A stretch of DNA of 64,000 nucleotides from Laetmonice hystrix (GCA_965235115.1 OZ249440.1:12090001-12154000), one strand, 5' to 3'. Positions 957-38,896 are shown, numbered from the stretch's first letter. Numbers and translations are program-made. The notes: generated by a model from the sequence alone, not told the origin.

Positions 957-1059
957 TGTATCGTTTAGGTCCATCTTCCAGACAGAAGGACAGTGTCAGT
1001 GTGGCATCATCCTCAAAGAATTCCGTCGCAAACGCATCCCACCAGAGATTGTCACTTTC
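957..1059 (-). CDS. LDB1/2: LIM domain-binding protein, dimerization-domain exon (ESDNLWWDAFATEFFEDDATLTLSFCLEDGPKRY)
   Basis: The translation is nearly identical to vertebrate LDB2 (DSDNLWWDAFATEFFEDDATLTLSFCLEDGPKRY). Acceptor tttactcacAG at 1061-1060, donor GTAAGT at 956-951. 103 nt, phase 0 in and phase 1 out. The next exon (TIGRTLIPRYF...) was not found in 1-950, so the gene runs off the window. Confidence 0.97.
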
Positions 1060-7945: not shown

Positions 7946-9781
7946 GAGAGAGATATTAGATACAAAGTGCGGTAATATTGAATCCCTTGTATTTCATAAT
8001 ATTACGTGATATTTTCACAATATTCCGATATTTGCGGAATACCCTCCCTTTGTAACCATCTATTCCAGCTTCCGTATCATCAACACCACCTTGTTTGATA
8101 TTTCTCTCAATTCGTACAGATCTGATAGTTTTAGCTCAAGACGTTATCCCCCTTTCCTTTCAGGTCACCAGTAATGTGCTTCCAACTTCATCCAATTACA
8201 TTGTGTACTGCACGAGATACTGGAATCAGCTTTTGTCGATTTCTTGTCTTTGGCGAAAGTGGACACTAAAAGTTATCAAAAACCTTATAGAAAAGACAGT
8301 GAGTGAGACTCGATAAGATCAGGTGTAATAATTCTGACAGAATGAGTGTTGGAAATCAGTGTCAGTGGCGGTAAGAGTGACGACTATGCCGGCGATGGGC
8401 ACGGCCTTCTTTAATTAACCGTCCCCCTATTATAGCTATTGAGGGACGTTAACTGTGGGCGAATCAATAGTAAACGACACTGGCAGAACAAGGAGGACGT
8501 GCTTGTATGGATCGTATTACTCCATCTTTCTGCGCTCTCTCTCTCCCCCTGCATGACTAATTATATACCTTCTATATTGAGCACTGTGCTACAATCCCGT
8601 CTGTACAAATCGTCGCCAATGGGCCTTGAATGTAATATATATCTGTATAAAATCTCTTACATTGTCTACTAGATTACAGATGTTTCCAAACACGTTTTTC
8701 TTGTGTGCTACATGAGCTTAGCTTCTGTAATCTACTGGATCTCATTTCTCTGTCTGAAACTGATGTTGACTAAAGTAGCCCTGGAGGAAAAATATCTCTT
8801 CACTCGTTTTACTCCCCTCTCTTAATTCTTACTACATCAAATCTTCATCGAACATGTTACCAGCAGATTATTCTCACAAAGAAACATCAATTTTTCAAAT
8901 CAGTTTTTCTACCCTGTAACAAACATTATATTTACAGAATTGCCGCGTAGACTATTTAGATTCTATAGGTCACGAAACTATAACACTGACGTCCGAACAA
9001 TCATCGAAACCTACATGGAAATATATCCTTTACTAATCCTCTACAGGAACGACATGCGCGAGTACACTACTAACAATCTACAAGGACTGTACGGTTTATA
9101 ACCATGGGTCCTTCTATCATAGTAAACTACAACATATGGCAAGACAACTGAACAACAAACCAACACAAACATTTTCTACATCTAACAACGCTGCAATTCG
9201 CTACCAATGCGGGAGCATTGGCACCCGACAAATACTAAAGCAGAACAAAAACCTACTCCGTGAAGAAAACAAAATAAGACTACATTTATTTTCAGTTTCA
9301 CGGAAGCAGGGACCGAGAGGCCCGCTGTCTCTGGTAAAAGGGGGTCAACATGAAGGGGGTACCTACGTTCTCTCCAGGTCCACCTGGTGGCTGAATCGAG
9401 AAAGAAGAACACTGCAGCAGGCGGTAGCAACAGTGGCTCAGGGTATACACAATGTACATGACACACCCCACGGCCGCCACAACCAATTCAATACCACCAC
9501 ACAAACAGTACACTCTCAACGTCAATACCTCGAGTTTAAACGGCAAACAAAACACACTGGTACAAACAAGGAACTCTCCTGTCACTACGAACGGGACGAG
9601 GAGCGGGTGGGGAATGAGTAGCACATTATTTAATTATTAAAGAGGGTTGGAGTGGAAATATCGCACAATAATCCTGTCGTCATAGGATTCAATTATTAAC
9701 GTGGGTTAACGTGGAAATATCGCTCTCCTGGTGCGATATTATTGAATTATTAACGACGATTAACGGAGGAAATATCGCTCT
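7946..9781. mobile_element. Putative decayed DNA transposon with degenerate inverted terminal/subterminal repeats (unclassified)
   Basis: 7946-8018 is an imperfect reverse complement of 9652-9728. GGAAATATCGC occurs three times at the right end (9654, 9713, 9768). An A-rich interior carries an unassigned + strand ORF (9136-9621). Confidence 0.5.
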
Positions 9782-14731: not shown

Positions 14732-15462
14732 GAGCGGACGTCATCGTGTCTAAAACCATTGTGGATGGTGGAGAAACACTTCCACCTGCCTGTGACCACT
14801 GTAACCAATGGCAACAGAACTATCTCACTGAGACAGACGTCATCGTGTCTAATGCCAACCATTGTGGATGGTGGAGAAACACTTCCGCCTCCCTGTGACC
14901 ACTGTAACCAATGACAACAAAACTTTCACTGAGACAGACGCCATCGTGTCTAATACCAACCATTGTGAATGGTGGAGAAACACTTCCACCTCCCTGTGAC
15001 CACTGTAACCAATGGCAACAGAACTATCTCACTGAGACAGACGTCATCGTGTCTAATGCCAACCATTGTGGATGGTGGAGAAACACTTCCACCTCCCTGT
15101 GACCACTGTAACCAATGGCAACAAAACTGTTTCACTGAGACAGACGCCATCGTGTCTAATGCCAACCGTTGCGAATGGTGGAGAAACACTTCCACCTCCC
15201 TGTGATCACTGTAACCAATGGTAACAAAACTGTTTCACTGAGACAGACGTCATCGTGTCTAATGCCAACCATTGTGGATGGTGGAGAAACACTTCCACCT
15301 CCCTGTGACCACTGTAACCAATGACAACAAAACTGTCTCACTGAGACAGACGCCATCGTGTCTAATACCAACCATTGTGAATGGTGGAGAAACACTTCCA
15401 CCTCCCTGTGACCACTGTAACCAAATACAACAAAACTGTCTCACTGAGACAGACGTCATCGT
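14732..15462. repeat. Minisatellite, 103-bp unit x~7
   Basis: gagacagacg recurs at 14830, 14931, 15034, 15137, 15240, 15343 and 15446. Confidence 0.97.
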
Positions 15463-18400: not shown

Positions 18401-20370
18401 TGTTAGTTCCACGGACGGTGGAGGAGAAATCAATGGGGACACTACGCACAACCCATGGAGACCCTCCCCCCACACACCCCACCCCCACCATCCTTTATGG
18501 CTTACCCCTGTACAATGTGGCCACCCTCCATTCCTGTCTCCCCCAGTGCTTTACCCTGTCTGCTGGTCCCGGTTCATGACGCTGTCTCTCACTGTGAGAC
18601 CCTCACGTACCTCCCCAAGCACCTCCACCACTTTCACCACCCTGTAGCCTTGATTATTTTATCTTAGGAATTCTGGCAGAAAAGAAACTACAAAGAAGCC
18701 AACCAGGAGCTCTTTGGACCTCCCGTTACAAATCATCCCTGGCTACGACCTCCTCTAGTTTACGACCGATGATCTTAATCTGAGACCTCAACTTTTTCTG
18801 ATAGTGCAAAATATTTCTTGATCGGTCGCGGCCGTTCACTGTGAAAGCTGGCTGACACAATTTGGGTGAAAAGTCATAATTTAGACATTCCTTCCTTTAA
18901 GAGTTTATACGTCACCCCAAAGAACATATTTCTTGCCCAAGCTTATCTGGTTTAGAAAAAACACGAGTTTTACATCAGTTCCTTGGGACACTATAATTAC
19001 AACATCAAAGGGGCAGCCGCCCCCAAAGACAAATGGTTTATCTGGTAACCGACTCGGAAACCGAATAAGTTACCCCCACACAGAATAACATAGTGTAATC
19101 ATATATGATGGGCACTTGGGCGACTGTTATAATACCTCCGCTATAAAACTAAAACCTTTGCCCAGGCAGTGCCGCTGGCAAACATTATAAGTGGGCCAGG
19201 CTGGGCAATCGAAGTTACCGGCACCAACCACCAAGGCAAAATTTGAAAAAAGGCAAATTTGGCAAGCTGGCCCCAGGCATGCCCCCACTTTTCAGCTGTG
19301 ATGCCGGCTAGATAGCTGCCGCCAATTTATGTACGCAGCAGACCCTGGGAAAATGACCTTTAGCGGGCACAACTGACTCGATCCCCTATAAATTGACGTT
19401 CTTACTATCTTTTTCCTCATATAATTCCCTTATTTTGTACATTCCAACTATTACTGACAACATGGACAACGTTTTCAAAATCCTGCTGTGGTCTTCTTGT
19501 GACCAACAGGTCTGCCCCACTCATAAACTGAACTCATTCCGAAAGGCAGCGGCCATAAAGGACTGTAACAGTTGACAGTAAAGGTAAAGGAATTCGGGTC
19601 ACCTCTTCTCCCTGGAGCTAACTCTCGCCCTCCCACCCCCTTTGACTTCAGTTCATGGCTGTCTAAACCCAGCTTTTCAAACAATCATTTCTCGTTCAGT
19701 CCTGTGGATATGGGGGGGGGGGGGGGTTGTTTCAGCATACCTTCATCAAAAACTGATGTTGAAAGACCTCAAAACCTGATGTGCGAGAGTATTAACAACC
19801 CATGCAAATGATCCATTTACCATTCAAAAGCTTCCAACATAAACAGGCTTCTTATTGTTTAATTAGAGAAAGTACGGAGTGGCAGATTTGGACCTTTTTT
19901 CCTTCTTATTTGTAATAGAAATGGGCATCCTCGAATAAGAAGTAAATTTCAAAATCACACATGTAATGAACGTTCTAGGAAAAACTGCTATACACCAAAC
20001 AACATCACAAATCGTTAATCATTGCTAACTCTATCACTGGACTACAACCTATAGAACAATCCTTGAACGTTAGGCCATTAACTTTTGTACAATGCGGTGA
20101 ATGGGAAGCCAAGCAAAATGTAAATTGGCCAAAGACACTAGCAATTTTTACAAAAATTGTTTGCCCAATATCTGTGGACACCAGACACGGTAATTCTCTT
20201 GCCTGATTGAATTATGCGCGACGGGCCAGGGTTCAGCGACGGCACAACGCCACTAATATGATCGGCCCAGTATTCCGAGATGACATCAGGGGGGCTGGCC
20301 GAGTCGCCAAATTAAATGAGTTACAGGGTACACTGTCTGAATTAATGGGTAAAGTAGAGCAGGTACTGAC

Positions 20371-20502
20371 CTCAGTGCGTTGCTGCAGCCGCTTGTTGAG
20401 CTCGTAGATCCGGTAGTCTGGCTGACCCATGTATGGGGTATGGCGCCTGTAAAATTGGGAGAAAGGGGACGAATAGAAGGGGTCGGCATTCATGTTGACC
20501 AT
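20371..20502 (-). CDS. LDB1/2: LDB short-isoform first coding exon (MVNMNADPFYSSPFSQFYRRHTPYMGQPDYRIYELNKRLQQRTE); also contains an internal acceptor giving exon 20371-20446
   Basis: Matches the LDB2 N-terminus (MSSTPHDPFYSSPFGPFYRRHTPYMVQPEYRIYEMNKRLQSRTE). Donor GTCAGT at 20370-20365 is phase 0 and joins GAA at 1059 in frame. The start may be the ATG at 20502 or at 20493. Confidence 0.95.
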
Positions 20503-21780
20503 TTATACAGTTGGCAGGTTAGGCATACAATGGCAGAACAGGGCAACCAGCGACGATTGGGTCCAGGGGGGTGCCTTCCTTCACCAAGCAGTGGGAGGAA
20601 CTCGTGTGATAACCCCTCAGTGAGATACGGAGAGTGCAGTCCCGCTAGAGAGGGTAGAATCTGGGACAGAAATGAATGTAGGTCCACGCGAGTTGACTGC
20701 CGCCGCCGCTGGGGGTGGGGTGAGTGAGGGTGGTTGAGTTCCTCCTCCTCCAGCTGACGGCGCCGAGTTCTCCAGGCAGCACGAGCCCCCTGGGTCCGTG
20801 CGGTCGGGGGCGGGGCTGACTCCCCAACACTGGCCGGCCCTTCCTCGACAGGGTCCCGCGAGGCCTGCCGACTGCACGCCTGGGTCTCGCACCGCTGGAG
20901 GGGGTGTGTTCTACTGCGAGCGCCTCAGTTTGGACGGACGATCACCTTCACTGGATCACTGCTCCGTAGTCTGCTACACCATCCTCCCTTACTGGAGGAT
21001 GGTGGTCGGTGCTGACAGCCCTTGTTGGCTGGTACCTGGAGAAACTCCTGCCTCCTGCCTCTAACTCTCCTAGCTCACTCTTCTCAAAGTCCTGCTACAG
21101 CGGCTGCTACAGTGTCCAGAGAGACCTGTACTAGCTGTGATACTATGCTTACTGTTGATGACAATGACACAATCCCGCAGGTTATGTGTATGTCTATGAG
21201 AGGCAGACGGCTCTGTCTGTATGTGTATCTATGAATGTGTATGATGTGTAACCAGGCTTTGCACCAGTGGCTCCCCTCCGTGTCAATGATAGACTCGCCG
21301 GTCCAATGTCTCTATGTACAGGATCAGCCCGGGCTGGCTGGCCGTCGGCCCGTGTTGACCGTCAGGATCTAAGTGACAGATCCACAGCCTGTATGGCCCA
21401 CCTGACCACACTCTCTCACTGTCGCACCCTTGCGGAGCTTTCAGAAACAAGCCTGGACCAAGAGTCCTGCCCCCACTCTCACAGCCTCTGCCTGCCCAGT
21501 CCGCCTGTTTCTAACAGACTAGCTATTACCTTAGCGGCAGCCAAACAACAGCCAGGCTGGCCTGCTATCACGGCTCTGGCAAGCTTGGCCCCGATATTTA
21601 TGTCATCTCGACCGGGCGCGGGTAGGCAGGCAGGCAGGCAGGCAGGCAGGCTGCGGCAGGCAGTAGCAGGCGGGCGGTGGCGGGCTGACAGGCAGGCAGG
21701 CCGCTGCTTGCGTTCGCTCTCCCACTGAACCACGCTCAGACTCGCCTGGCGACACGAGCGCCATCTGGCGGTTGTCTATA
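20503..21780 (-). promoter_or_regulatory. GC/CpG-rich island upstream of the LDB short-isoform ATG (putative internal promoter and 5' UTR)
   Basis: CpG-rich segment with a GC-box (ggggcggggc, ~20806-20815), an (AGGC)n tract and a CTCF-like site at 21758-21771, directly 5' of the LDB2-like start. Confidence 0.55.
21624..21701. repeat. (AGGC)n microsatellite
   Basis: Seen directly; pure over ~21624-21651 and degenerate afterwards. Confidence 0.9.
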
Positions 21781-24700
21781 ACCACCTTACTGAAGTCTTC
21801 AGCGCTTCACTGGCAAAAACACAGCACAGCATAATGTGATTACACAACAGTGGCTTTCTGCTCAACAGAGACGACAACAACCTCCCAAGTTTGCCAGGAA
21901 AAATAATCGTAAGCAATTTATTCAAGCAACGAAGACTATTCACATCCAAGATTATTGTAAAATATCTTTTTAAATGTCAGCATCCAGCAGCCACTGAGAG
22001 ACAGCACAATCAAAAACTATTTCTGCCTGTTATTACTCATAAATAAACTGCGTGAAACTATTCTTCTGAGATGTCACTCTCAATAGTTCTATTCCCAAGA
22101 GAGCTTCACACCTCGAAACTGACTGAGTCTCATAGTTAGAGATTCCTATGTCAGTTTTCTCCTACTTTGACAACACAATCTTTTGTAGGCCATTCATTGC
22201 ATAATGAATAATCTATCTAGCCAAACTGCAAGTTATCTGCATGCTGATTTTTTGACATATCCTATACTACAATACTATAGTATGGTCATGATCATTGTTT
22301 TGTTTAAAGGTATAAGTAATAGGTTTAGTTACCATGGGTCAGTTACCTAAGGAGACTAAGAAAGATATTTCCGACACTGGACTGATAAATGCCAACACAT
22401 TGAACGATATTTCTGTCGGGTCTTACAAGTTGAATTTGATCTTTTCAGAAAAGTAAGTGTCACAAAGAAATTGCAACTGGCGGAACAAAAGATTCCTTCC
22501 ACTGGCTGCTTTTTGTCTTTGTGTCAAGAATTTTGCTAAGTGGACTGGAGCACGAGGAACTGCTCTCCTGCAGGGCAGGCGACTCCTCCTGGATAAAGGA
22601 ATGTGACGAGAGAAGCAGGCAATGCGAGGAGTGAGCAGGGGACCAGTCAGGCCATGGTGGACTCCTGGCTGACTATACTACCGACTGCCGGCTAACTCCA
22701 CTTCCAGGGAACCATCTCTCCTATTGATTTAGCAGTTTCACTTATTCATGTGCCACCGAAGCCACTCTCTGGTCAACGACGACAACCAGCTACAACGACG
22801 CTCCCCCTCGACATGGCTGATCAATACCGTCACGTGACCAAATTTTCAACTTTCCTCACAACCTTCCAAATTTACAGGGTGGCTGGTAGGGCTGGAGGAT
22901 CAGTGCGACTGGTCGAAATAAACCGCCACACCCACTGACCCCTCGTCATAGCGCACCCGAAACCTGCGGGCGGTTTTTATGTATAATGGCACTGCGAATA
23001 TAAGTTGTCGGTGAAAGTTTTGTGCGGGCCCGGTGATTATTCACAATGTAGGATGCAGGGACGGGGGCTGGCCGGCTGGTGGTGCGCCGCCCGCCGCCTA
23101 ACGACGCCGCCCGGGGTCAACCCCACGACGGGTGGTTCAGCCACCGCCGCATCCACACACGGGCCACGCCAGCCTCTATATTTCAACTTTCATTATCATT
23201 CATGGCGGAAAAAAATCTATTATACAGAAGGCTTTCTTAGATCGGCCACAAACAACACTCCTAGGTTAAATATATGTGTGCTAGAACAAAAAGGAAAATT
23301 AAACAGTTGTTTACTATTATAATTCGCGGCCCTACTTTAATTTGAATGGCATAAAATACAGGTGAGTACGAAGGGCTCAAGTCGCTCTTCGGATACCGTG
23401 CTCTTCCAATCATGTAGGTTATCTATAATCTTCAAGTACCTGCATGCTTGCCAAGTGGCACCAGCAGTGATCGGCCTTAGTCAACACGCCCCCCCCCCCC
23501 ATTTCAACAACGATCTACAATGATCGTCAATGCTGGCCAGATCTCAATAATAACTAACTCTACACAAGAAAACATGTTAAACAAGTCACCTGCCTTAAAG
23601 ATTGAATTAATTCTCACCACCAATAATAGGAAAAATGAGGAACTGCTGCCGAGGAGGCTGTTGATGAATAATTCAAAATCATAAAAACGTTTTAATCTCC
23701 AGTTATTTAATTCCGTTCATCAGGAATGATTTGAATTCATTTGCATTTTGTCCCGATTCCCGACCGAAATATTTTCTGGTAATATCTGGCAGTAGAAAAG
23801 AATGCAGAACATTCCTCTCTACGGTCTGATCCCTTCTTTAATCTTTACTTTTATCCAAATTTTGTACATTTCCAAATCGTACATACTTCTCTTTACTGAA
23901 ACCGTTCGAACTTAAAAAAACTAGTCCCCATGTGAGCCACATCTCCATAAAAAACAAACCGTTATCTTGACGATAGGTAAACCTAATTACAGTGCTGCAG
24001 CCGGCGAGTGACATAGAGAACCCTGCCTGTATGTCTCTGTGTGGGGAACCCTGTGTCGGTAGTGGCCAGACTTTGACAAGGCTGCCCCGCTGGTCTCTCT
24101 CACATACATCATGTGGTAGAGCGAGAGGAGGACCGGCCATCAATACGACCCAAGTCCACCCACAATGTACGCGACCACCACCACCACTACCCAGACTCCT
24201 TCAATAAACCACCCAAACAGCTCTCCAAGCCTTTACCTTTCACAACTTTATATGCAACCAAATATCAAATACGTAGTATTGACATTTCTACGTGTCTGAA
24301 TTTCGTAGCTGCATTGGATTTCACTCTTTTTCAATTTTTGTTTTATAAGCCATATGTTAGCACACTGAAGTACTGCCGTACAGTATGGTTGCTTTGACAG
24401 GGTTTTGAATATAATCATGAAAGTGTAACAAGAATCGGAACTCCCTCACGTTACCGATGATTCTGTCTGCCTCACAAAACTCGGCCCACGTACCGGTAAT
24501 CAGACAATATTTAATTACCGCGCTACGCCTTCCTGTCAGTTGCAGCACACTTCCTGTTGGAATTCACAGTTCAAAACGTGTGTGAATTGTTTGGTTTGTG
24601 AATCCCCTGGCGACGAAATATTTAGGCGTCTGGAGAGTCGCCGAATCCAGGCTTTATCCGGGGAATTTATGAGCTGTGCAACGGAAAACATCTTTAGTTG

Positions 24701-25338
24701 TAAAAAGAACAAATTTAACTTCCGTAAAGATTTTTCCATTCACAAGTCTGAACTTTCTCAATGAAAAAGTGAAACTTTGAGAGGGAAACGCTTCTGAAAA
24801 CTGTTTTGTCAATGTTCAATGCCGAAACTGCGTCTGTGATGCCGGGAATGCCGCGACAGTTAATCTATGCTCCATACTGCATTTTCACTGTTGCAAATAT
24901 TACAAGCTGATGGGAAAGGTGAATGGGGAAACTTTTTGAGCATAATCATTCCATTCCTGCAAACCTGATTGAAATCAGGTGGGTGATTTAAAATGTTTCC
25001 ATGGAAACACTATTTAAAACCAACTAGAGAAGGAAGATGCTTCACTGATGCAAGAAGCCACTTGCAATGGGGAACAATATTGTACTGCAGTGGCAAAAAC
25101 CTGAAACAATGGGGGTGTGCTCATTATCGTTAACTATGTTCATTATGATAAATACGGTAGCCTTTATTTCAGACTGGCATGCATGTTCTACGTTGGTTGG
25201 CGTGGCAACGGGTGGGCTGCAGTGCCTGGTGACACTGAAGGGGGGAGGGGAGGCTGGGGGTGGCCATGGAAATATAAGGACGGGTCAGGCTCACAATCTG
25301 CAGCCAGCTTCATCACGTTGCCATGGGAACGTATGGGA

Positions 25339-25376
25339 TGGTGGTGGTGGTGGTGGTGGTTGGGGGTGGTGGTGGT
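25339..25376. repeat. (GGT)n microsatellite
   Basis: Seen directly. Confidence 0.9.
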
Positions 25377-27637
25377 TGAGGGGGTCTGGCGGGGTCTACC
25401 TACCCAGCAATCAATAACCACATTTGTGGGAAGTGCGGAACAGTTGGGATGGGGGGCGGGGGGGGGGGGGTTGAGAGACGCAGGGAATGGGGGACCTAGA
25501 GATAGCAAACTGGACAGACTGACAGACAGAGGTAGACAGACCCCCACCCAGATTCACCTAAACAAACCAATTTCATGAAAGTATTATGCTACTGTCTACA
25601 TTCATAGATACTTGTGGAAGAATGGGCAGGCGCCACAGGTGTCCGCTCCCCGTGTAGAACTTTACTGGATCTTTAACCATTCCTACCCTCGGAATCACAT
25701 TCATAACACAGAAAGTATCACACCCACTTCGAAACATAATGATTTGGATGCTAGAGAACTATGATTACCGGCGGCAATGGAAACTACGCTCGGATCAAAT
25801 CTGACCTCGGTATGGTGTGTTAAATCATAATCATTCACAACGATCTACTCGAGATTTCAAACATAAACAATATGAGCTCCGTTTGTAGCGTTCCGAGTCG
25901 TACATTACTTGTGATACCTTGGGAGATTCCTGCTGAGCGAATGGTCGAGAATTAACCCAAAACATATTCCTCTCATGGTCATTAAGTACTCGCAAACAGT
26001 CTTCCTTTTTTTATCATTTTTGATTGAAAGATGTTACAGCAGCCCAATCCGACTGAGAGAAATGGCAGGTTTCATACTCATATTACAGACATTATACCTG
26101 GATAGAGAACATAGACTTACTTTCGTCTATGAAAATAAGATCCATTGTAATAATCGATCAATACTCTCATTCAAAACGAACTACGGCAAAATATTTCATT
26201 ACCAGGGCATGAAACTTCAGTAAACGTCAGTGAGAAATTAGGAAGCAATGAAGGGTGGGGTGGAGGCTGGGGTGGGTGATATAGGATGGAGACTGTCAAT
26301 AGGGTGATGAGTGGGGGTCGGGGGTCGTATGAACGATGTCTGTGTACGGTATATTGGCCAGTCTCAATCATGACACCCAATGTGGGTGCATGTAGTGGTG
26401 GGTTACGCCGCAGCAACAGCCAGGGTCATATTGAGGTCAGGGTGACCTGTGGAGGAAAGAGGAGTACCCGATGGAGACCAGACACCTGTAGCAAGTGACG
26501 TATACGTTCTCTCATCACATGCTTTGGTCCTGTGCTTTTTCTTATCCACAAATAAAACAATAATACTTCAACTTCAAATTGAAGACTGGAATGGAATAGA
26601 AGATTCGAATGTCGACTTCTGACATTTAGAGTCGTCAACATCATTCACTCATCAACCACTGGTTACTATATAGCCTGACACCTGTCTCGCCCTCTCCCAT
26701 GGCAACCATTGCCATGGTTACTGCAAGAAACTAGATCTATCTTATTGCTGACCGTTAATACTAAGAAGTACCGGTACATAAAGGGAATCTGTCTAGTTTG
26801 CAGAAAATATAAACACTAAACAGTAGCATACAAATCCTGTACAGTCCCGTTTCTACACAAACCTAGTCCTAGATACAGACTATCTTATTTTTGTACCAAA
26901 ATAATAACAGGACAGGTCGCATTTCATTTCGACTCAGACTTTTGCCCGCGTGTTCCTGAACGATTTTGGTTGTGTTTTATACTTCAGGTAGGCAGACTGA
27001 CTGCTGCCTCGGCTGGGCAGACTGATTGTCAGCGAGACTACCGCCTCAGGTGGGCCGACTTTCAGGTAGACTGCTGCTGCCTTGCGACACCCGCTGTCAT
27101 TTCTGACGCCAACGTCTAAATACTCCCCTACTATTCTAGATCAGGCAGACAGAAACTGTATTGGACACTGTGAAATCAAATGCACCTAGGGGAAGTGGGT
27201 AGTCTTCCAGGTTGAGAGATGTCATTTAAAAACCTACCAGTATGAAAACCCTACTTGCTGATGTACTGTCACTTCTATTTATGTAAAATGTATATCTTTC
27301 TCTGATAAAGTTGTAAATTTTAATTTTTCTCCGATAAGGTAGTTTATATATTATTTTTGCGTAAACTACTGCACCTTTAAAGCGTTATAAAACTGAGAGA
27401 AACTGGTAGAATTGTTGTTTATTCATTGTATTAAATTAAACTAATCGTGCTCTATTTCCCCTTATCTAGACGGGTTATGTTAACAGCACTAATTTACTAC
27501 GTAACGGGAGTAAAGGGTAGATTCTCAATCTGGGGATTATTTAGATGGATACTGCAGGCCTGTCTGAGGTTGAATGTTCTGGGTGAACCGCCTACTTGGG
27601 ACCAGGCCAGATTTTCAGGCTCGCAAATGATGCTCTA

Positions 27638-28443
27638 CTGCCACCTGGTGGTAACAGGGTGCACTGTCGACGTGACATAGCGGAATGTTCCGCCAGTCGG
27701 CGTGACTGCACGAAACTGGTTACATTGGATGCCGCCAGGTGGCATGCCCACATATACGGTATCCCAGACCTATTTTTCAAGCTCCACAAATCTTCATAAT
27801 TATGTCGTCCTACTGGAGGTCGTTGTGGAAGCCGTGGGAGGTCCAACACCACTCGAACCTATTTACATGGCCGGTTCCTACTTCTAGGAGTCTACAATCT
27901 TAACTTGGGCAAGTTGGGCCAAGTCAACTCCCCGTCTAGACACAGAGACACACTCCTACTTGGCCATTTGTTGGCTCACACCCGGCCTGGCTGTCTACAA
28001 TATCAAGTTGTATTTTTATCACTTTAGGTCGAATTGAAATGATCTTTGTTTAAATGAATGCATTCCTTTAATATATGCGGCAGATAAACTTGATAGACTT
28101 TGCCTAGTGAGATTAAAGGGGCTATGACTTACCCACATCATGAACCACCTAGTGTTTTTTTTTGTTTTGTTTTTTATTGCTTTATTTACCCTGGCTAGAC
28201 GTCAGCGTTGCCGCTGGTTTTCACAGTCAGCCAGCAAGTTGTACAGCGTCGGAGAGTTTCACAATTACAGAATTCTGTATATTTAACAAACATTTAGAGA
28301 AAACAAGGCCCTCCCTGGGCTCTTAGTCTTTAAAAGTAATATAAACATAGATGGTCAATAATGGTTAATAACTATTATGAAACGGGTGTTGCCTATCTAC
28401 AAGAGCAAATTGATGCATCTTCGTAGTCACTAGAGGGCGCCAC
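27638..28443. promoter_or_regulatory. Cluster of three CTCF-like motifs
   Basis: CCACCAGGTGGCAG (minus, 27638-27651), CCGCCAGGTGGCAT (plus, 27732-27745), TCACTAGAGGGCGC (plus, 28427-28440). Confidence 0.5.
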
Positions 28444-29959
28444 CTAGACTTTATATGGTTAGTTTTGTATCCGTCCGTCCAATCCGAGTTAGCTATTATG
28501 ACATAGAACTGGTATGATACATACTTACAACAACTCACTGTGTCACCTTGAGTCTGAGAGCGCGAACACTTTTAAAAACAACTTCCTTCCCTGATCCAAA
28601 CTCTCCAGTTGGCCAACATAACTTCAACCACCGCCACCTACCTGTCAAGTGAATCATTAACGTGCGCTACTATTCCTCCATCCCTTACCTCTGAGGGTTT
28701 AGATCTCTATCTACAGTTGCCCAGCACTGGTTGATGTGGATGCATTATGCAAGTCTCTGGGCTCCAGCATGATTAGAGCTCACAGTCCTGCGCCATTACC
28801 TTATAACTGGCCCTGGATGCCCTAACAGGGAGGCACGGGGCTGGCACTTTGGGTGCAGTCGCCGACGGAATTAATACAGTTACTGGCGTTGTCATGGTGA
28901 CTAACTACCTGGCTGCTACTGCAAGTTTCATGTCGTCATAATATTACAGTTCAGCTGCTACTTTTTCCCTGCAAGCCGAGGTTTGTGCACGCTAAAGTAG
29001 CAGGTAGGACTCGGCTCAGCCTCGGTATCATTCGGTTCTGTCTACCACAGTATGAGAGGGGTGGGTGGGTGAGGTGGGGGGGTCGGGGTGGGTGGGGAGA
29101 AGTTGAGGGAGGGAGTTGCCCGCGGGAGGGGGGGGGGGGGGTACTTCGTGATGGAGGAGGGCGCTCTAATGAGTACCGATTTCTCTGTTTAACACTTGGT
29201 TACTTAGTTTGCCGAAAAAAAGTTCAGAGCACCTTGTCGGTGCAACCCCCCCGCCCCCCCTCTAAGGCAACTTAATGGTGCACACACACACTCCATAGCA
29301 GCTTAATGGTGCACCCCTCCCTCCACTCCAGAGCACCTGGATCTATTTTCTTTGGTTTTTCTGACTTGGCTAACTAGCTTGCTTCTAGACGACCTTCTCT
29401 CTATACTACTAACTTCAATAAATCGTTCCTTAGCAACAACGGTTTAATAATCACTTCTGTTTATTGGAGCTCACACGTTCATTTTACCGATCTCAGCTTT
29501 AAATCAGGAATCCAACCTCATCTACTTTAACTTTCAGTCATTAAATCTTTGTTCACAGTTAATCCCACGTAATAACCAGGGTACCCGAGTACGGCCTGGC
29601 ACCTTTGGCGGGGCCCTGGCGGCGCCCTGGCCTCCTGGGTCTATCCTTGATGCCGGAATCATGCTGAATGGAGTACGTTTCACAACTTTCATCATTATTA
29701 TAGATGTTGCCATTGTCATCATCATTTTACCTGTGGCCGTGTTTGTTTTTAATCATACTACTACTGTGAAATACTACTCCTCTAGAATTTATTATCAGAA
29801 TTCAACTCCGGAAACTCCGGAGTTATTTATTAACCAATTATCAGGGATTCTTGAAATCTGTGGTCATATCGACCAGCTGCCACGATACGAACTCTCTTAT
29901 CTCAGCTTTGAAAGTGGGACTAAAAGTTCTGTTGAGAAGTTGTCGCAGAAATAAGTGAT

Positions 29960-30130
29960 TCGGCGCACCGCAACCCTCTGACGAAGTCCATGTGGTTGCC
30001 AGGCAACAGATGAAGCTGTTCACCTTCACATAAATTCTTCACTACTATCATTGGTTGTGCACGTCACCTGGCAACGGAGCGGAAGTTGGTGGATTGACGT
30101 GAAAACGGGATGAACTCGGCGAGGTGGGCA
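29960..30130. promoter_or_regulatory. Compact promoter-like element (X-boxes, CCAAT, CRE-like, ETS)
   Basis: GTTGCCAGGCAAC at 29995-30007, ATTGG at ~30050, CACGTCAC, GTCACCTGGCAAC at 30063-30075, GCGGAAGT at ~30079-30086, TGACGTG at ~30095. Confidence 0.55.
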
Positions 30131-31976
30131 GAGTGAAAGGTGTTGGAGTTGGGCCATGTGGTCAAATGACATGAGTGTTGCCCTTGTCAACAGGCCAGCT
30201 GGCTGATGTCAAACAACCGGCCGGTCGGGCCTGACGCCGGGTATCGATCGGTGGCGACCAGTCCGCCACCACCAAGGCCTCTCCCAGCCAGTAGTTACAC
30301 AACCCCCCCCCCCCTCCATAACACACCCAGCACTGCATACTTAATCTCGGCGTCACATGTAAACGGTTTTTTCTTTTTCTTTTCTTAATCTGCGTTGTTT
30401 TCTTTGGATTAATTTCAGATTCCCTTGTTTTCAGGCCGGTTTACCGTGATTAGGTGAAGACTGTGAGAGTGTTCACCTTTCTCAGTGGGAGCTAAAGACT
30501 GGAACCAGACGCGATCAGGAGTCCCACAGGCATGGCTAGTTGACCGAAGTCAGTTGACAGTTGTTACATACATGATGTCTTCCTGGCGTTCGACCTGCAG
30601 CATCCAATCACTTTTAGAGGCTGTTTATCATTATGGTCCCACTATATAATCAGTTAAAGCAACTCGTTTAAATCCATCCTCTGTCCTGATACGGCACTGA
30701 CGTGTGCGAGCTGTTTACGATGATGGTTGCCCTTTCAATGATGGCAGGGGACGGCTACACTACGGTTTAAAATATAAACTCATTTATCATGTGAATCCAC
30801 CCAGCAAAGTAAAGCGCAACCATGTTACCGTAAACAACATTTATATAGTTATTCAAATCAGACCGCTTTCCCATTTCTCATATGTAACATATTCCACCAA
30901 GTGCATGAACCTCTGCCCTCCCCCATTATACAGAGACTTCATAATTAGACAATCATTCAAATAACCCGTACTCTGATCATGGCATATCTCTGCCCACCCA
31001 ACCCCTAGCCGACATCCTTCAACCTGCTGCGGTCACGCATCCAGGCTTGCGTGAGAAACCAAGGTACACGGAGTACTTAATCAAATGGCGCAGACTGTAA
31101 CCGTTATCAGACTGTACACGTCATCGGACGATCGGATTACTGGATTATTATATACCTCCCGGCCCTGCAACCTTCCAGTACCAATCACGGATTTTCTTTA
31201 TGATTACCTGGCCGGATTCTCGGATGATTGGTTGGAGAAGGAAGGACGCATGGTGCCTTCATATAACCTACATCCCACCTGCACCCCACAACCAGCGCCT
31301 ACCTGACTTTGTAAGGCCACGTATAATCCAATAGTCATACACCAGGACATTTGTAGACGCTGGGGGTTTCAATCTGCTGTCTCTCCCCAGACAGTACATC
31401 TAATCCGTCTTTCTATCTTAATCTACATGAGTGTCTATTATATATTCCCGTAACATTAATCATCACTATACATGTATATTATATTACAAATTAGAAAATA
31501 CCGGGGTACTTAAAATACTTAACGCAAAATTCTAGTGCCTATTTAGACAATTTGTGAATGAAAATTGGGGGGGGGGGGGTTGTGAAGAGCGTTGAGTCGG
31601 TACTAGCACGGAAGGGAAAGAAGAAAATAAAAATTCAAGGCGGGATGGCAAATTATCCTAGATTTCATCATATGCTGGCTACAATGACAGTGCTTCGTAG
31701 AGAATGCAGTTGTCATGACAACCATCAGTAATATGGCTTTTTAAAAAAAACCGGCTTTGTTTGAATAAAAGAAGATTTTCAAAACACTGCAACGTGTTCG
31801 TTATACGGCGGTATATTCCTTGTGGGATGATCCCTGCCTCATGGATCCATAGAATAACTGTTAGTCTTACGTCTCTCAGACATTTCTCGACTAGGGTTTC
31901 CCAGATTCTGAATCTGTCTCATATTACAGGATCCCATCATGGTATGTAAAGTCTCATACATTCATCTCACTTCGGA

Positions 31977-32120
31977 AACGATATAAGCTGGTCATAGCAC
32001 ATAGACCGCGTTAGATATACATACTAACGATATAAGCTGGCCATAGCACATAGACCGCGTTAGATATACATACTAACGATATAAGCTGGCCATAGCACAT
32101 AAACCGCGTTAGATATACAT
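31977..32120. repeat. Tandem repeat, 49-bp unit x~3
   Basis: acgatataagctgg(t/c)catagcacata recurs at 31978, 32027 and 32076. Confidence 0.95.
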
Positions 32121-35100
32121 TCTGTACATACACATGTACTAAGTAGTGAAGTTCAAGTACCTGGTGGGCAAAAGCAGCAGTTTGTCAAATGTAGTCGAGA
32201 TATAACGTTTGTTTACCAGGAATATAGAATTCAAATTTTCACATTCATGTATGAATTATATTCATAGATAAATACAGATGCCCCAACGTTTAAGATAGCC
32301 AGTTAGTTTATATCCGCCATCTTCAAGGCAAGAATCCCGTATTTTTACTTATTCGCCCATTTCGTGATGATAAGATAGAACACGAGAGTAATTTCGTTTT
32401 TCAAATGGAGCATTTCCCGTGCAGGAGATACCACTTCTAACTTTACTAACTTAACATTGTCCTTTATGCCACAGACGACAAATGAGATCTTCTTTAAGAG
32501 AATGTACCAAGATGGGGGTGGGTGTCTTGGCTATGTTTTTGTGGTTTTTATCGCAAGAACCAGCGACAGAACAATATCATATTTCTAGGACTCAGGTATA
32601 TATTACAGTCAGTATACCGACTATGTGGTTTATCAGTATGGCAGACAACTTACCCTAATGGAGCCTCGGGCCTAGGACAACTTCGTCACAATCCGCCCCC
32701 TCCTGTCTCCAACCCTGCAGGGTCCTATAACCTGGAGGATTCTCCACGTACCGTTGGGAGGTGAGGAAGCAATCAAAGCCCTCCAGGTGACGGGACCTCA
32801 CCCTGTGGGGTCTGAGAGATGGTCTGGGCCTATCACCTGGTAAGCTCAGTTGTGGTCGCTCTCCCTGGGCAATGAGCTGTGGCTGTACGTTACTCTGGCC
32901 AACTTGTCGGTCGCAGAACTCTCTCCTGCTGGCTGCGTGAAAACCGCTGCCTTGAGACCTCAACCTATCCTCGCCACCAGCAGTTGGCTGTGTCTGCAGG
33001 GAGTGTCTCTCACGTGGTCAATGAAAGTGGTCAGTACTATGAGGAGGTCAGGCGCTGGTTGTGCCATCACCAGCTTGTCTCCTGACCACTCCACAACTCC
33101 CGTGATGGGTCACTTCAGTTCTCTCTATGAAATGAGCGGAGCTGTCACCGCTACTGGAGTACTCCCATCTCAGTTCCCCGCCGATCCTACTTGTTGCTGG
33201 GATTTACTCCCAACAAAGTAGCATTCGACTCGGGTGGATTCTGTACTTTGTGCCCACCTCCCGTCAACTGTTCCGCTTGATCTCCCTGGGACAAACTGCC
33301 CTCCGTGAGGCGGGGTGCTCAGACATGATCACACGTCGGGCATCACCTGGGTGATGTATGGGTATCAAGCGGGGGTAGTGTCACCGCCGGCCGCCTGGTG
33401 GCGCCTCTGGTGGAGCCGCCGCCGCCGCCGCCGCCCGGTGATCACCGACAGCACTTCCCCAGAGGTGAGCTCAATCAGTGTTTGTTCATGTTTGTCGATG
33501 GGGCTGTTTGCCTCCCCACCCGGTACACACACACACGCCAAGCCGGGCGGTACACACACAGCGAGCCGACGGCAGGCCTCACGGTCCGGCCGCTCAGCAG
33601 TCAAGCGCCGCCCCCGGAACCGCAGCCACACTTTGCGTCCAATGGTCTATATCTTTATTTGCGTTCTGCTCTCTGTAAATATCAGCCTTTGTTGAACCTA
33701 ATAGCATCTGCAACTTGTGTTTCCATGGAAACCATTTGGCACCTTTTCTGGGAGGTTTACTAATGGGAGTAAGTAGAAGGGAGGGTGTGTGTGTGGGGGG
33801 CGGGGGGGGGGCTGTTAGGCTGGGACTGTACTTGGAGCTATAGGGTAGAGGGGTGTTGATAGGTTGGGAGTAGACGGGGTAAGTAGCCGGCAATGGGGGT
33901 TGTCAGCCCAGGTATGAACCCCAGCAGGTGTGGATAGTACCTGGGTGTGGGCATTAATTCGGGTTGAGAGTCTGAGCGTGTACTTTTGGGGGAATGAACC
34001 CTACATGACGTGAAGGGGATATATAGGGGGCCTTGGTTTGGTTCCTCGATTGAAGTATAGGTGGTCTGTACCAAAAACAACCGGCTCCGATATAGTAGCA
34101 GGGTCTATACTTTATATAAAGGCGGTGCAGGATGGACCTGAGGTTAGTGGGGGGGGGGGTCCCTTTTTTTTTTTTTTTTTTCTAATTATTAAGGTGTTTT
34201 TGTTATCATTATCGAGAGAAACTCCCTATTCTTTCTGTAATGGCCTCCTTAGCCTCCATCCGTCCATGCGTGGCCCCTCTTTGACCCTCAGCTGGCTGAC
34301 ATGGTAACTCCCTGGCTGCCCCATAAGGCCTTATCTCACCCATAAACGACGCATCCCTGGTGGAAGCCTGTTCCCACGCAACACCCACAATGCTGGCACC
34401 ACCAACCGGTTTCGTTTATGAGCGATAGACTCTGACATTCACACCGCCTCAATCTGCTCGCACTGAAAGCAATCAATACGGCAGCGAGAGCACGCTGGCC
34501 CGCAGCACGTACTTGTGGCCGCCTTGCCTACCCGTGTGCTATTGTCCCACATCCCCAATCACGCCTATGCTACCGTCATATCCCACCAGGGGGAGCACGT
34601 GGTCACATCCACCTAGTGTTTATCATCGGAAGCTGAAATTAGCAAACCACGTCTTGCCCAAAGTGCAGCAATGATTAATATATCAAACTCGCTTTAATCA
34701 ACCGTGCTGTGCAGAGGGGCCGGTCCTTATAACGACCACATTACCGGCAGTCGTAGGTAATAATCTAACGTTCAGTGCTACAATATACGCCGATATACGG
34801 CAACGCTGCTAAGTATCACTATTAGGAGTTTTGGACCAGCTGAATGCCATTTCGCTCAAACACCACTAAATTTTACATGTTACATTTTCTTGATATTGGA
34901 AGCTATTTTTGGTCATCCTTTTGGCTAGCAAAGGTCTAATACCACAGACAGAAGGTTTGTTTGAGTGATAGTCGTCCCCAGTTCCCAATCCTGGCCCAAG
35001 AAACTCGTCTCAATATTTAATGCCTGTCTTGGGCTGAATACCCACTGGACCCCTGCGATGTTTGTTCCTGAAAGGTTTCTTTTATTATTAAGTTATGCAC

Positions 35101-37169
35101 TGGAAAGTACATTTCTATGTATGTGCTTTCCGATCATACTGATCATAAATGCTGGATTCAAACTATTTTCCAGACTGAAGGAATGACTCAAATATTTCAG
35201 AGAATCATTCCTTGAACGATCAAGAATTAAATAGAAAAAAATAACCTTTCACGTAGGCTTCCATTAAAAAAATCATTTATGACATAAAATCAGTGCAAAT
35301 GCGATTCATTAAGAGTGTTTACATGTCTTTCTCAATCCACTCCCAACCGACAAAAACTGTAAACGATGGCATCTTTCGATCATGACATTCATGTACACGG
35401 GAACGTGTGATCCTTTAGAAAACCTCTTTTTATGACCCTGTGTAAGATTAACCATTCCAAGAAATATAAATGTTGGCTGCCTAGAAGCCCCTTTCTTCAT
35501 ACTGTGGCCATCTCTAGTGTAACAATATTCTATGACATCTCATGGCTTCTGATTCACCAAATATTGTTTCTACGCTCCCTACAGGATGAATTGTCTATTG
35601 CCTTACTGACTCCGACTAACAAATATATGAACAGGGCTGTCTCTTACCAGTATCATCTGGTACAACTAGTAATTTGCTCCGAGCCAAATCCCCGTCCCAT
35701 TACACCCCAGCGGCGTTCAATATGCTGGTGTTTCATCTAAACACTGTTGGACATTTTGGAGCTGACCAATTCTTGGTGTGGTATCACAATTCTGCTGTCA
35801 ATTTGGTGCAAGCTGCCGCCGGCTGTGTTCACAAAGAGGCCGATAATTGGGTGCAGGCAGTCGGTGCTGTCAGTCGGCGGTGGCTGCCGGCCTGGTCGTC
35901 ACAACCTTCCGTATTGTTGCAGCTGCCACGGTTAAAAACGCGCCCGACATCTAGGTCGGTACACGGGGGCAAACTGCCGCTCCAAGTTTCCAGGTATTTA
36001 ACCCGACCGCCAGTATAACATGTAGATAGCCGCACCCTCACGAGTCACACCCTCAGGTTTCGACATTCTAACCCATATACAAGATTTATTGGCGTAACTC
36101 GGGAGGATGTACAGCCCAGCATCCTCCACAGCGGATTGCGGCCTTATTCCTTCCCTATTTCATCCCTAGTCTGATTTACAAACTTGTGATCTTCCATCTA
36201 GTTACTGATATCATGATAGGGCACAAAGGCAGCTTGGCGACGGGCTTTCTCCAATAGGGAACCTTCAGTCCCAGCAGCAGCAGCCTTTCATCCACTGGGC
36301 ATGATCATACACCACAGAGGGTATACCATACGTCAGAAAGGTTCCAATTGCAGCTACAGGAGTAGCTCAAACGATCACAGCCTTCTCAGTGTTAGTGACA
36401 CGAACAAAATACTGCCTCCTGCTCAAAGATAAAGTCATGTTCATAGTTCCAACAATATCCATAGCAAAGGTTCCTGCTTTATTTGACATTTTAATTTATA
36501 TGCCAACTCGTGTATGATACCTACACGCAACGACACTTAACGGGAACCTGTCTATGTGACTTCATTACAAAGAGAATACTTGTATCCATTACACTTCAGT
36601 TCTCCCCGTAACGATCTTTTCATCCCAGTGCATCGTTATTTCCTTTTCACTCTCATGTTGTTGTTTTTTTTCAAAATCTCGGCCCATCGGATTAAGGATG
36701 GAATATGAGCATCTTCAGATAACAATACATTCTCAAGTCTGTCCACCACAATTTATAACAGTTTTCCCACATCAGCTCATCATCATCAACATGAAAATCA
36801 GTACCCAAGGCCACTGGACAGTACATGCATCTATACAAATATTACAAATAAATGTGATATATGTGAATTAGGCGTACATTCAACAATCGCTATTATACAG
36901 TATCTATTTAGAGTTTTACGTAACATTATATCAATGTTTTGAAACGTCTTTTACCATAATCTTCTTTCTCCAAAATATTTCATATAAACTTAAGTCTATC
37001 TTTAACATTTTGGTTTGAGTTGATTTCCCTCTGAATGAATCAATCACTTGAGAAGATCCGGTAAAGATGCACATTCACTACGCTCTACGCAGGGCTTTGA
37101 AACTCACTGCTCCTGCACCCCTCTTTCATATACTACTTGCATCCCCTCAAACATGAAAAGGTTACTTAC

Positions 37170-37570
37170 GTCATGGTTGGGTCTCTGTCGAGAGGGCTCG
37201 GCATGGGAGGCTGAGGTCCCATCCTGACCATGGGGTGACCAGGGTGGCCAGGGTGGCCGGGGTGCCCGGGACCTCCCGGCATCTGCGGCGTACCGGGCCC
37301 TGCCGACCCCGGGTGCTGTGGCCCGCCGCCGGGGTGCTGCTGGGGCCCTCCAGGATGCTGCGGTTGGGGCTGAGGTCCTCCGGGCATCTGGGGCACTCCG
37401 CCTGGGTGCGGCTGGGACTGTGGGGGGCCTCCAGGAAGCTGGCCCCCAGGGTGCCCCGGCGGGAACCCCAGTGGGGTCCCGGGGGGTGGGTTCGGGGTGC
37501 CCGGGTGCGGGGAACCCAGCCCGCCCGGACAGAGACTCGGGGAGGCCAGCCTGACGTTTGTTGTCGCCAA
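37170..37570 (-). CDS. LDB1/2: LDB long-isoform Pro/Gly/Gln/His-rich N-terminal exon ending ...PMPSPLDRDPTM-T; 5' boundary uncertain
   Basis: FPPGHPG and LDRD motifs resemble LDB1 (FPPFHPGTMLDRDVG). Perfect donor GTAAGT at 37169-37164 (phase 2) fits the acceptor at 20448-20447 (AC+G = Thr, then RHTPY). Candidate acceptors at 37604-37603, 37572-37571 and 37552-37551; first in-frame ATG at 37387. Confidence 0.72.
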
Positions 37571-38230
37571 CTACAGCCAAGTCCCAGGAGCACCTTCAGT
37601 GCCTACAACACACAACATTCAATTCATCAATATCAAACTACACAATGGTCCCCACAACATGTCAACAGTATCAGGGATCTTGACTGTAGCTTGCTGTCAA
37701 CATCTCTGATAGTATGCGATCAAAATTAACCTTTTATCAACCCTCCAACATCCAGGCCCTGCTCTCGTTTTAACAAGGACACTTTAAAGACCTGATTTTT
37801 GCAGCATCAACAGTGCAAAGTAAAAAGAGGTTCTGCCCACCTTATTAACTGAGCAGATGTGATGACAAATATAGACCCTACTGGCAAGTTGGACACATCA
37901 TATACTACTATTTGAAGAGATCCTTTATTATGGGGCAGTTACAATGTTTATTATGGGGCAGTTACTGGACTTCGACTCGATCCTCGGTACTCAATGAAAT
38001 CACACAATGATCTCGTTTCCGAAGCCTTCTCAATTATCTGAGGCGCTCGTGGCCGATGATCAGACCAGCTCACTCATCAGGCCTGAAACGACATACTCGA
38101 CTTTTCACCACACGACAAGCTAATATGATGCGGTTTGTTGACATACCCCGCTACAACGGGGATCGCTTGAGCGAATATAATATGGCGAGTCAACATCCTC
38201 GGCCAAAATACCACGTTAGATGATGTGCCT

Positions 38231-38896
38231 ACCCAGTTACAATACCACGTTAGCTAACCCTGCTGTGTGAACTTTACCAGTTACAATACCACGTTAGCTA
38301 ACCCTGCTGTGTGAACTTTACCAGTTACAATACCACGTTAGCTAACCCTGCTGTGTGAACTTTACCAGTTAAAATACCACGTTAGCTAACCCTGCTGTGT
38401 GAGCTTTACCAGTTACAATACCATGTTCGCTGACCCTGCTGTGTGAACTTTACCAGTTACAATACGATGTTAGCTGACCCTGCTGTGTGAACTTTACCAG
38501 TTACAATACCATGTCAGCTAACCCTGCTGTGTGAGTTTTACCAGTTACAATCCGATGTTAGCTAACCCTGCTGCGTGAACTTTACCAGTTACAATACCAT
38601 GGTAGCTAACCCTGCTGTGTGAACTTTACCAGCTACAATACTATGTTAGCTATCCCTGCTGTGTGAACTTTACAAGTTACAATACCACCCTGCTGTGTGA
38701 ACTTTACCATCGACAATACCTGAATTACCATCTACAATACCTGAATTACCACGTTAGCTAAATTAATGTGCCGAGTGAACATACTCGGGTAGAATACCAG
38801 GTTAGCTAAATGTGCCAAGTGAACATACCCAGCTACAATACCATGTTAGCTAAATTAATGTGCCCTGTGAACATACCCAGTTACAATACCACGTTC
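38231..38896. repeat. Minisatellite, 44-bp unit x~11 plus degenerate copies
   Basis: taccacgttagctaaccctgctgtgtgaactttaccagttacaa recurs every 44 bp from 38243 and decays toward 38900. Confidence 0.96.

What the first reader, a model, noticed from the sequence alone, without database searches (positions are those of the whole stretch)
20371..37570. One LDB gene appears to encode both the LDB1-type and the LDB2-type N-terminus
Seen in the sequence: the 20371-20502 exon starts M..DPFYSSPF..FYRRHTPY. It also hides a strong acceptor (cccctttctcccaattttacAG|G CGC CAT at 20448-20447) inside its own coding sequence. The distal exon ending LDRDPTM-AC|GTAAGT at 37170 splices to that acceptor in frame, giving ...LDRDPTMTRHTPY.... 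So the FYSSPFSQFY codons double as the polypyrimidine tract of the long isoform. Known: DPFYSSPF is the vertebrate LDB2 N-terminus, and FPPFHPGTMLDRD is the vertebrate LDB1 N-terminus. Inference: an unduplicated ancestral gene made both isoforms, and after genome duplication LDB1 and LDB2 each kept one (isoform subfunctionalisation).
Basis: partly seen in the sequence, partly recalled or inferred. Interest (0 to 1): 0.78.

Follow-up and report, generated by a model that had tools for sequence, protein, structure and literature searches.

The report
Two-headed LDB gene, ancient design
This invertebrate's single LDB/Chip gene makes two protein heads from two promoters. One head's codons double as the splice signal for the other. 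The design is real and dates to early bilaterians, but vertebrate LDB1 and LDB2 did not share the heads out as neatly as proposed.

Summary
On the minus strand, exon 20371-20502 opens with ATG, directly after a stop, and encodes MVNMNADPFYSSPFSQFYR-RHTPY. An AG at 20448-20447 lies inside those codons. A distal exon ends at 37170 (AC|GTAAGT). A transcript contig of run X3 joins 37170 to 20446 exactly. Other contigs run unspliced from the exon across the acceptor to at least 21300, while the downstream intron has none.

The DPFY codons are under protein-level selection, with only synonymous changes in two relatives. The 847 bases upstream hold only 2 ATGs, as expected for a 5' UTR. The gene is single-copy.

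One gene produces both heads, an MPSP-L/M-DRD type and a DPFYSSPF type, joined at the same point, in 13 species. These include molluscs, a ribbon worm, insects and a crinoid, so the dual design is ancestral.

The clean partition fails. LDB2 of six cartilaginous fishes and a paddlefish still has both an MLDRD head and a DPFY head, and a bird LDB2 has an MLDRD head. Only LDB1 appears to have lost one.

This is a hybrid first/internal exon, which is a known kind. The isoforms already sit in automatic annotations, and I found no paper describing them. Interest is moderate.

The parts
37170..37387 (-). Coding part of the distal first-type exon, counted from the first in-frame ATG. It is P/G/H-rich and ends ...MGPQPPMPSPLDRDPTM + AC. 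The ORF is open up to a TAG at 37573-37571. The true 5' end and start codon are not determined.
   Evidence: The RNA contig overhang matches 37170-37199. The end of the exon aligns with DRD-type heads of other phyla.
37164..37169 (-). Donor site GTAAGT of the distal exon.
   Evidence: Its use is shown by the junction contig.
20447..37169 (-). The 16.7-kb intron of the long isoform. Its 3' end holds the proximal promoter region, the 5' UTR and the DPFY codons.
20503..21349 (-). Transcribed leader of the short isoform, a probable 5' UTR. The start site lies further upstream, probably near 21.3-21.9 kb.
   Evidence: RNA contigs cover 20417-20777 and 20754-21300+, the latter a 596-nt record. There are only 2 ATGs in 847 nt, against a shuffle mean of 10.2. 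GC is 0.54, against about 0.44 in the surroundings.
20518..20522 (-). CTAAC, the only branch-point-like motif in the AG-free zone. Its A at 20519 lies 72 nt from the AG. This is inferred.
20447..20502 (-). Dual-use stretch. In the short isoform it is the codons MVNMNADPFYSSPFSQFY(R). In the long isoform it is the polypyrimidine tract plus AG acceptor (AG at 20448-20447).
   Evidence: Only synonymous changes are seen in relatives, AGG is kept, Ser is always TCN and Gln is always CAA.
20371..20446 (-). Exon part shared by both isoforms: (T/R)RHTPYMGQPDYRIYELNKRLQQRTE.
   Evidence: (record 3 covers 20371-20446).
9367..9390 (-). A 24-nt microexon encoding PPGGPGEN. It is included in the main RNA contig.
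957..1059 (-). Next exon, ESDNLWWDAFATEFFEDDATLTLSFCLEDGPKRY, at the start of the LIM_bind domain. The rest of the gene lies below the window start.

Best explanation
The window holds the 5' half of the genome's only LDB/Chip gene, which encodes a LIM-domain-binding transcriptional scaffold. Promoter choice selects between two conserved N-terminal peptides placed about 12 residues before the LIM_bind dimerisation domain.

A distal promoter gives an exon ending MPSPLDRDPTM. This exon splices across 16.7 kb to an acceptor at 20447/20446.

A proximal promoter inside that intron gives transcripts that begin upstream of the acceptor. The acceptor then has no donor to pair with and is read through. 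Translation starts at the ATG at 20502 and yields MVNMNADPFYSSPFSQFYR.

The exon is therefore a hybrid first/internal exon. Its DPFY codons also serve as the polypyrimidine tract and AG of the long form.

Shown here: both RNA forms, coding constraint on the DPFY stretch, single copy, and the same pair of heads in many phyla.

Inferred: the position of the proximal start site, the branch point, the start codon of the long form, and any functional difference between the heads.

Evolution: the pair predates Bilateria's split. Vertebrate LDB2 kept both, at least in cartilaginous fishes, a paddlefish and a bird. LDB1 kept only the DRD type.
For: - Junction 37170 to 20446 is present in an RNA contig.
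- Contiguous RNA contigs cross the acceptor and the ATG up to at least 21300, with no coverage in the next intron.
- ATGs are depleted upstream of 20502: 2 observed against about 10 expected, and 0.1% of shuffles do as well.
- All 13 codons of DPFYSSPFSQFYR differ only synonymously between the window and two relatives, while the flanks cannot be aligned.
- The gene is single-copy.
- Thirteen species have isoform pairs identical downstream of the same junction.
- DRD-type heads align across phyla.
- Pfam LIM_bind starts about 12 residues after the junction.
- Vertebrate N-termini are confirmed from papers.
Against: - Run X3 is not on record as RNA. I infer this from its spliced contigs.
- It is one sample from one study.
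- Contigs cannot show 5' ends or reliable ratios.
- No cap or start-site data exist for either promoter.
- Most isoform pairs in other species are automatic gene-model predictions that I did not check against reads.
- The 128-nt AG-free run is not conserved. It is 37-87 nt in relatives.
Confidence: 0.82

Rival explanations
1. The ancestral gene made both isoforms, and after the vertebrate genome duplications LDB1 and LDB2 each kept exactly one, as reciprocal isoform subfunctionalisation.
For: The ancestral dual design is well supported. Mammalian LDB1 starts MLDRD and LDB2 starts MSSTPHDPFY. LDB1-type genomic read-through ORFs show no DPFY. One fish LDB2-type exon has lost the AGG acceptor codon. 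LDB1 and LDB2 lie in paralogous regions.
Against: LDB2 of six cartilaginous fishes and a paddlefish carries both heads on an identical LDB2 core, and a bird LDB2 carries the MLDRD-type head. A cat LDB2 model also uses the inner acceptor. The partition was therefore neither reciprocal nor tied to the duplication.
Confidence: 0.12
2. The RNA lying contiguous across the acceptor is retained intron or pre-mRNA, not a separate promoter product. Only the long isoform would then be made in this species.
For: Contigs cannot show a 5' end. The contiguous contigs have lower word depth than the junction contig.
Against: - There is no coverage in the neighbouring intron 19900-20369.
- The ATG at 20502 sits right after a stop, and the ORF is kept with synonymous-only change.
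- The leader is ATG-depleted.
- Orthologous DPFY-first isoforms exist in many phyla.
Confidence: 0.08
3. Vertebrate LDB1's exon MLDRDVGPTPMYPPTYLEPGIG is a fusion. Its second half (P-M-Y-P-P-T-Y) would descend from the DPFYSSPF stretch, so LDB1 kept both motifs in one head.
For: tblastn aligned the lamprey head MLDRDPGPLYSPSYMEPDIG over the window's DPFY codons. Shark LDB2 DRD heads read GPTYPSSFSEPDMG, which looks similar.
Against: Shark LDB2 has that Y-P-S-S-F stretch in its DRD exon and also a separate, intact DPFYSSPF extension. The two are therefore different sequences in one gene. The hemichordate DRD head also carries its own long tail. The similarity is short and compositional.
Confidence: 0.05

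Closest known systems
Hybrid first/internal exons (Fiszbein and colleagues; PMC8769537, PMC11797052)
   Same: One exon is an internal exon in transcripts from an upstream promoter and a first exon in transcripts that start just upstream of its 3' splice site.
   Different: Here the extension is coding. It carries a deeply conserved peptide whose codons are themselves the polypyrimidine tract. Conservation spans bilaterian phyla rather than mammals only.
Vertebrate LDB2 (CLIM1) first coding exon, MSSTPHDPFYSSPFGPFYRRHTPY
   Same: It has the same DPFYSSPF..FYR-RHTPY head directly before the LIM_bind domain. In sharks and a paddlefish the same inner acceptor is used by an MLDRD exon.
   Different: The window's gene is the single pre-duplication-type copy of an invertebrate. 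Its distal exon carries a long P/G/H-rich stretch.
Vertebrate LDB1 (CLIM2/NLI) N-terminus, MLDRDVGPTPMYPPTYLEPGIG-RHTPY
   Same: It has a DRD motif at the end of an upstream exon that is spliced, in the same phase (NN|G), to RHTPY.
   Different: LDB1 has about 17 residues between DRD and RHTPY, whereas the window has 4. No DPFY extension was seen upstream of the LDB1 acceptor.
Alternative N-terminal isoforms of invertebrate LDB/Chip in RefSeq models (Haliotis rubra X1/X4, Lineus longissimus X3/X7, Antedon mediterranea X1/X2)
   Same: The same two heads are joined at the same residue. The window's heads are most like the mollusc and nemertean ones.
   Different: Those are automatic predictions. 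In this window the junction and the read-through form are seen in RNA contigs.
Partition of ancestral splice isoforms between duplicates (the 'function-sharing' model, from my own knowledge of the literature)
   Same: An ancestral gene with two isoforms is followed by duplicates that differ in which isoform they make.
   Different: Here the partition is one-sided. LDB1 lost one isoform, while LDB2 kept both in several lineages.

Membership tests
LDB/Chip (LIM-domain-binding) family | LIM_bind dimerisation domain (PF01803) | tested here: met
   The exon just below the window scores 29.4 bits against a cut-off of 24.2. The exons are 70-90% identical to named LDB proteins.
LDB/Chip (LIM-domain-binding) family | Nuclear localisation stretch and C-terminal LIM interaction domain | tested here: met
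   KRRKRK and DVMVVGEPALMGGEFGDEDERLITRLENTQ were found in downstream exons. PF17916 was found in orthologues but was not scored on this gene itself.
Hybrid first/internal exon | The exon is used as an internal exon through its 3' splice site | tested here: met
   An RNA contig joins 37170 to 20446.
Hybrid first/internal exon | The same exon is used as a first exon, with transcription starting just upstream | tested here: inconclusive
   Contiguous RNA contigs reach at least 21300, and an ATG-poor leader supports this. No 5'-end data are available.
DPFY-type LDB head | M-x(3-6)-DPFYSSPF-x(3-4)-R directly before RHTPY, under coding constraint | tested here: met
DRD-type LDB head | (M)P-x-P-[LM]-DR-[DE]-x-G/T-x at the 3' end of an upstream exon spliced to RHTPY | tested here: met
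   In alignment A2 the window is 44-71% identical to mollusc and nemertean heads. The splice is shown.
Reciprocal isoform subfunctionalisation of LDB1/LDB2 | Each vertebrate paralogue has only one of the two ancestral heads | tested here: not met
   LDB2 has both heads in six cartilaginous fishes and a paddlefish, and a bird LDB2 model has the MLDRD-type head. For LDB1 only the DRD type was seen, but that survey was not exhaustive.

The most novel reading that the evidence does not exclude
All bilaterians may make two functionally distinct LDB scaffolds by promoter choice. In this reading the DPFYSSPF peptide is an ancient motif whose pyrimidine-rich codons (Pro, Phe, Tyr, Ser-TCN) arose from, and remain locked to, the 3' splice-site tract of the other isoform. 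Part of the LDB1/LDB2 difference in vertebrates would then come from LDB1's loss of this head.
Probability: 0.35. Interest if true: 0.6.

Novelty: new member of a known kind. Interest (0 to 1): 0.42.

Why it matters
LDB1 and Chip are core enhancer-promoter looping scaffolds. The short region before their dimerisation domain has hardly been studied.

Two alternative heads have been kept since before protostomes and deuterostomes split. This points to two scaffold versions with separate regulation, which could be tested by isoform-specific knock-outs.

The locus is also a clean example of one DNA stretch under double constraint, as both a peptide and a splice signal. It corrects a tempting but over-neat story of how LDB1 and LDB2 divided ancestral isoforms.

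Tried and rejected
- A homology search with the distal exon translation (133 aa) found nothing. This says little, because the sequence is low-complexity and the tool applies a length filter.
- I looked for a DRD exon within 10 kb upstream in relative L011 and found none. The intron is probably longer than that.
- P0011 could not be traced to a contig.
- I tried to place the organism by LDB identity, but the core is too conserved. The best matches were Haliotis at 87% and Lineus at 85%. Other notes of this scan call the genome annelid, which I did not check.
- No further P/G-rich ATG exon lies upstream on this strand in the window, so the long form's start stays open.
- I looked for a decayed DPFY remnant in LDB1 introns. 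The read-through ORFs are F/Y/S/P/L-rich, as any pyrimidine tract would be, and hold no recognisable motif.
- The long AG-free zone is not a conserved feature.
- Six literature searches found no description of the two heads as alternative isoforms, nor of their evolution.
- No RNA run is on record for this species. Only one run, of unlabelled kind, behaved as RNA.

Full report
**What is in the sequence**

The gene lies on the minus strand. Exon 20371-20502 opens with an ATG at 20502-20500, directly after an in-frame TAA. It reads MVNMNADPFYSSPFSQFYRRHTPYMGQPDYRIYELNKRLQQRTE and ends at a GT donor.

Inside these codons an AG sits at 20448-20447. The 20-40 nt before it are 80-85% pyrimidine. The 128-nt AG-free run before it is the third longest of 4,479 such gaps on this strand. 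The only branch-point-like motif in that run is CTAAC, with its A at 20519.

A distal exon ends ...PMPSPLDRDPTM + AC at 37170, followed by GTAAGT. Joining AC to the G at 20446 keeps the frame and gives ...DPTMT-RHTPY.

**The gene**

Downstream exons encode the hallmarks of LDB/Chip. These are ESDNLWWDAF...GPKRY at 1059-957, then below the window IGRTLIPRYF...HGKPMF, the KRRKRK stretch and the LIM interaction domain. Pfam LIM_bind scores above its cut-off.

Searches of the whole 627-Mb assembly with the family model and with two exons found only this locus. The gene therefore appears to be single-copy, within the limits of an exon-by-exon search.

**RNA evidence**

No run is on record as RNA. 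Four runs of one sample hold the distal exon. Three of them behave as genomic DNA.

The fourth, X3, has 58 Mb of contigs and behaves as cDNA. It has no coverage over intron 19900-20369, and its contigs break exactly at exon borders.

- One X3 contig ends at 20446 and continues with 30 letters that match 37170-37199 exactly and nowhere else in the window. The 37170-to-20446 junction is therefore real.
- Its main 3.2-kb contig ends at 20371 and continues into a 24-nt microexon at 9390-9367, then into the exon at 1059.
- Two further X3 contigs lie unspliced over 20417-20777 and 20754-21300+. They cross the acceptor and the ATG.

Contigs cannot show 5' ends or dependable ratios, so a separate promoter is inferred rather than shown.

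**Support for a translated short form**

1. The 13 codons of DPFYSSPFSQFYR differ only at synonymous sites between the window and two relatives (L010 and L011), while the flanks cannot be aligned.
2. In four invertebrate sequences the codon before RH is AGG and every Ser is TCN. Gln, which is present in three of them (the window and two close relatives), is always CAA. The stretch therefore stays pyrimidine-rich and AG-free while keeping the peptide.
3. The 847 nt upstream of the ATG hold only two ATGs, each opening a uORF of 2 or 7 codons. Shuffles give a mean of 10.2, and 0.1% of them do as well. The depletion runs to about 21750. This fits a 5' UTR.

**Comparison with other animals**

A profile-free search with the 44-residue exon, followed by a search with a full-length LDB, returned named proteins from many phyla. 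Two head types recur.

- The DRD type reads, for example, MPSQPMPSPMDREHGMG or MMPAPRMPSPLNRDPGIP. In arthropods it reads ...VDRMDQG.
- The DPFY type reads, for example, MMNMNPDPFYSSPFSTFYR.

In 13 species both heads are annotated for one gene, with identical sequence from the same junction onward. These are Haliotis rubra, Sinanodonta woodiana, Lineus longissimus, the crinoid Antedon mediterranea, two insects, six cartilaginous fishes and a paddlefish. Most are automatic models that I did not check against reads.

The window's MGPQPPMPSPLDRDPTM aligns with mollusc and nemertean DRD heads at 44-71% identity. The junction lies about 12 residues before the Pfam LIM_bind domain.

**The vertebrate side**

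Papers confirm MSSTPHDPFYSSPFGPFYRRHTPY for LDB2 and MLDRDVGPTPMYPPTYLEP for LDB1. LDB1 and LDB2 lie in paralogous chromosome regions.

LDB1-type genomic ORFs that read from the intron into the RHTPY exon always show R before RHTPY. One such locus reads ...TCCAG|G AGG CAC. This is the same intron position and phase as in the window. None of them shows a DPFY motif.

A search centred on the LDB2 core gave a different picture for LDB2.

- Cetorhinus, Callorhinchus, Pristis, Hemitrygon, Heptranchias and Mustelus each have an MLDRDMGPTYPSSFSEPDMG-type LDB2 isoform beside the DPFY isoform.
- Polyodon has MLDQDSG beside the DPFY isoform, and a bird LDB2 model has MLDRDEG.
- A cat model uses the same inner acceptor.

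Their cores are LDB2, not LDB1: 66-70 of 70 residues match LDB2, against 46-49 for LDB1. One fish LDB2-type exon has lost the AGG codon.

**Reading**

The design is in fact older and wider than proposed, since it is pan-bilaterian.

The proposed reciprocal partition does not hold. LDB2 kept both heads in early-branching jawed vertebrates and, in shortened form, beyond them. Only LDB1 seems to have lost the DPFY head.

**Mechanism**

Promoter choice decides the head. Transcripts from the distal promoter splice into the acceptor. Transcripts that start inside the intron have no donor upstream of the acceptor and read through it. This is a hybrid first/internal exon, a described class. Its unusual feature here is that the extension is a conserved peptide doubling as the splice tract.

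What the two heads do is unknown. They sit just before the dimerisation domain, so effects on stability, partner choice or self-association are the natural guesses.

**Novelty**

Six literature searches found no account of these alternative heads or their history. The isoforms are, however, already present in public automatic annotations, and the exon class is known. I rate this a new member of a known kind, of moderate interest.

**Limits**

- There is one RNA data set from one individual, with no 5'-end data.
- The start codon of the long form is undetermined. The first in-frame ATG is at 37387, a mollusc-like start is at 37222, and the ORF is open to 37570.
- The LDB1 survey was not exhaustive.
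- Other notes of this scan call the genome annelid. I did not verify this, though the head sequences fit a spiralian.

Noticed in passing
window 9367-9390 (minus strand): A 24-nt microexon (ttcag|CCACCAGG...GAGAAC|gtaggt) inserts PPGGPGEN between ...NKRLQQRTE and ESDNLWWDAF. It is included in the main RNA contig of run X3. Arthropod LDB isoforms show small inserts at the same exon junction.
   Followed up: partly
window 43046-44485: A 69-bp satellite of 20.5 copies at 96% identity, with no CpG at all. It lies upstream of the LDB distal exon.
   Followed up: no
window 3498-3909, 10432-10920, 14737-15462, 38233-38895: Several tandem arrays with units of 82, about 17-136, 103 and 44 bp, in or near the LDB introns.
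   Followed up: no
window 20533-20739: Differences between runs of the same sample: three SNPs, one further SNP at 20628, and GTGT and TCC insertions in the proximal leader. They may reflect heterozygosity in the sequenced animal, and they split the RNA contigs there.
   Followed up: no
window 37171-37593 (minus strand): All three reading frames of the distal exon region are open for 134-158 codons, because the sequence is GC-rich. The P/G-rich ORF upstream of the first ATG therefore cannot by itself be taken as coding.
   Followed up: partly
L013 (fish LDB2-type first exon): The codon before RH is CGG followed by AGA, instead of AGG. The nested acceptor seems to be lost or shifted in this lineage.
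   Followed up: no
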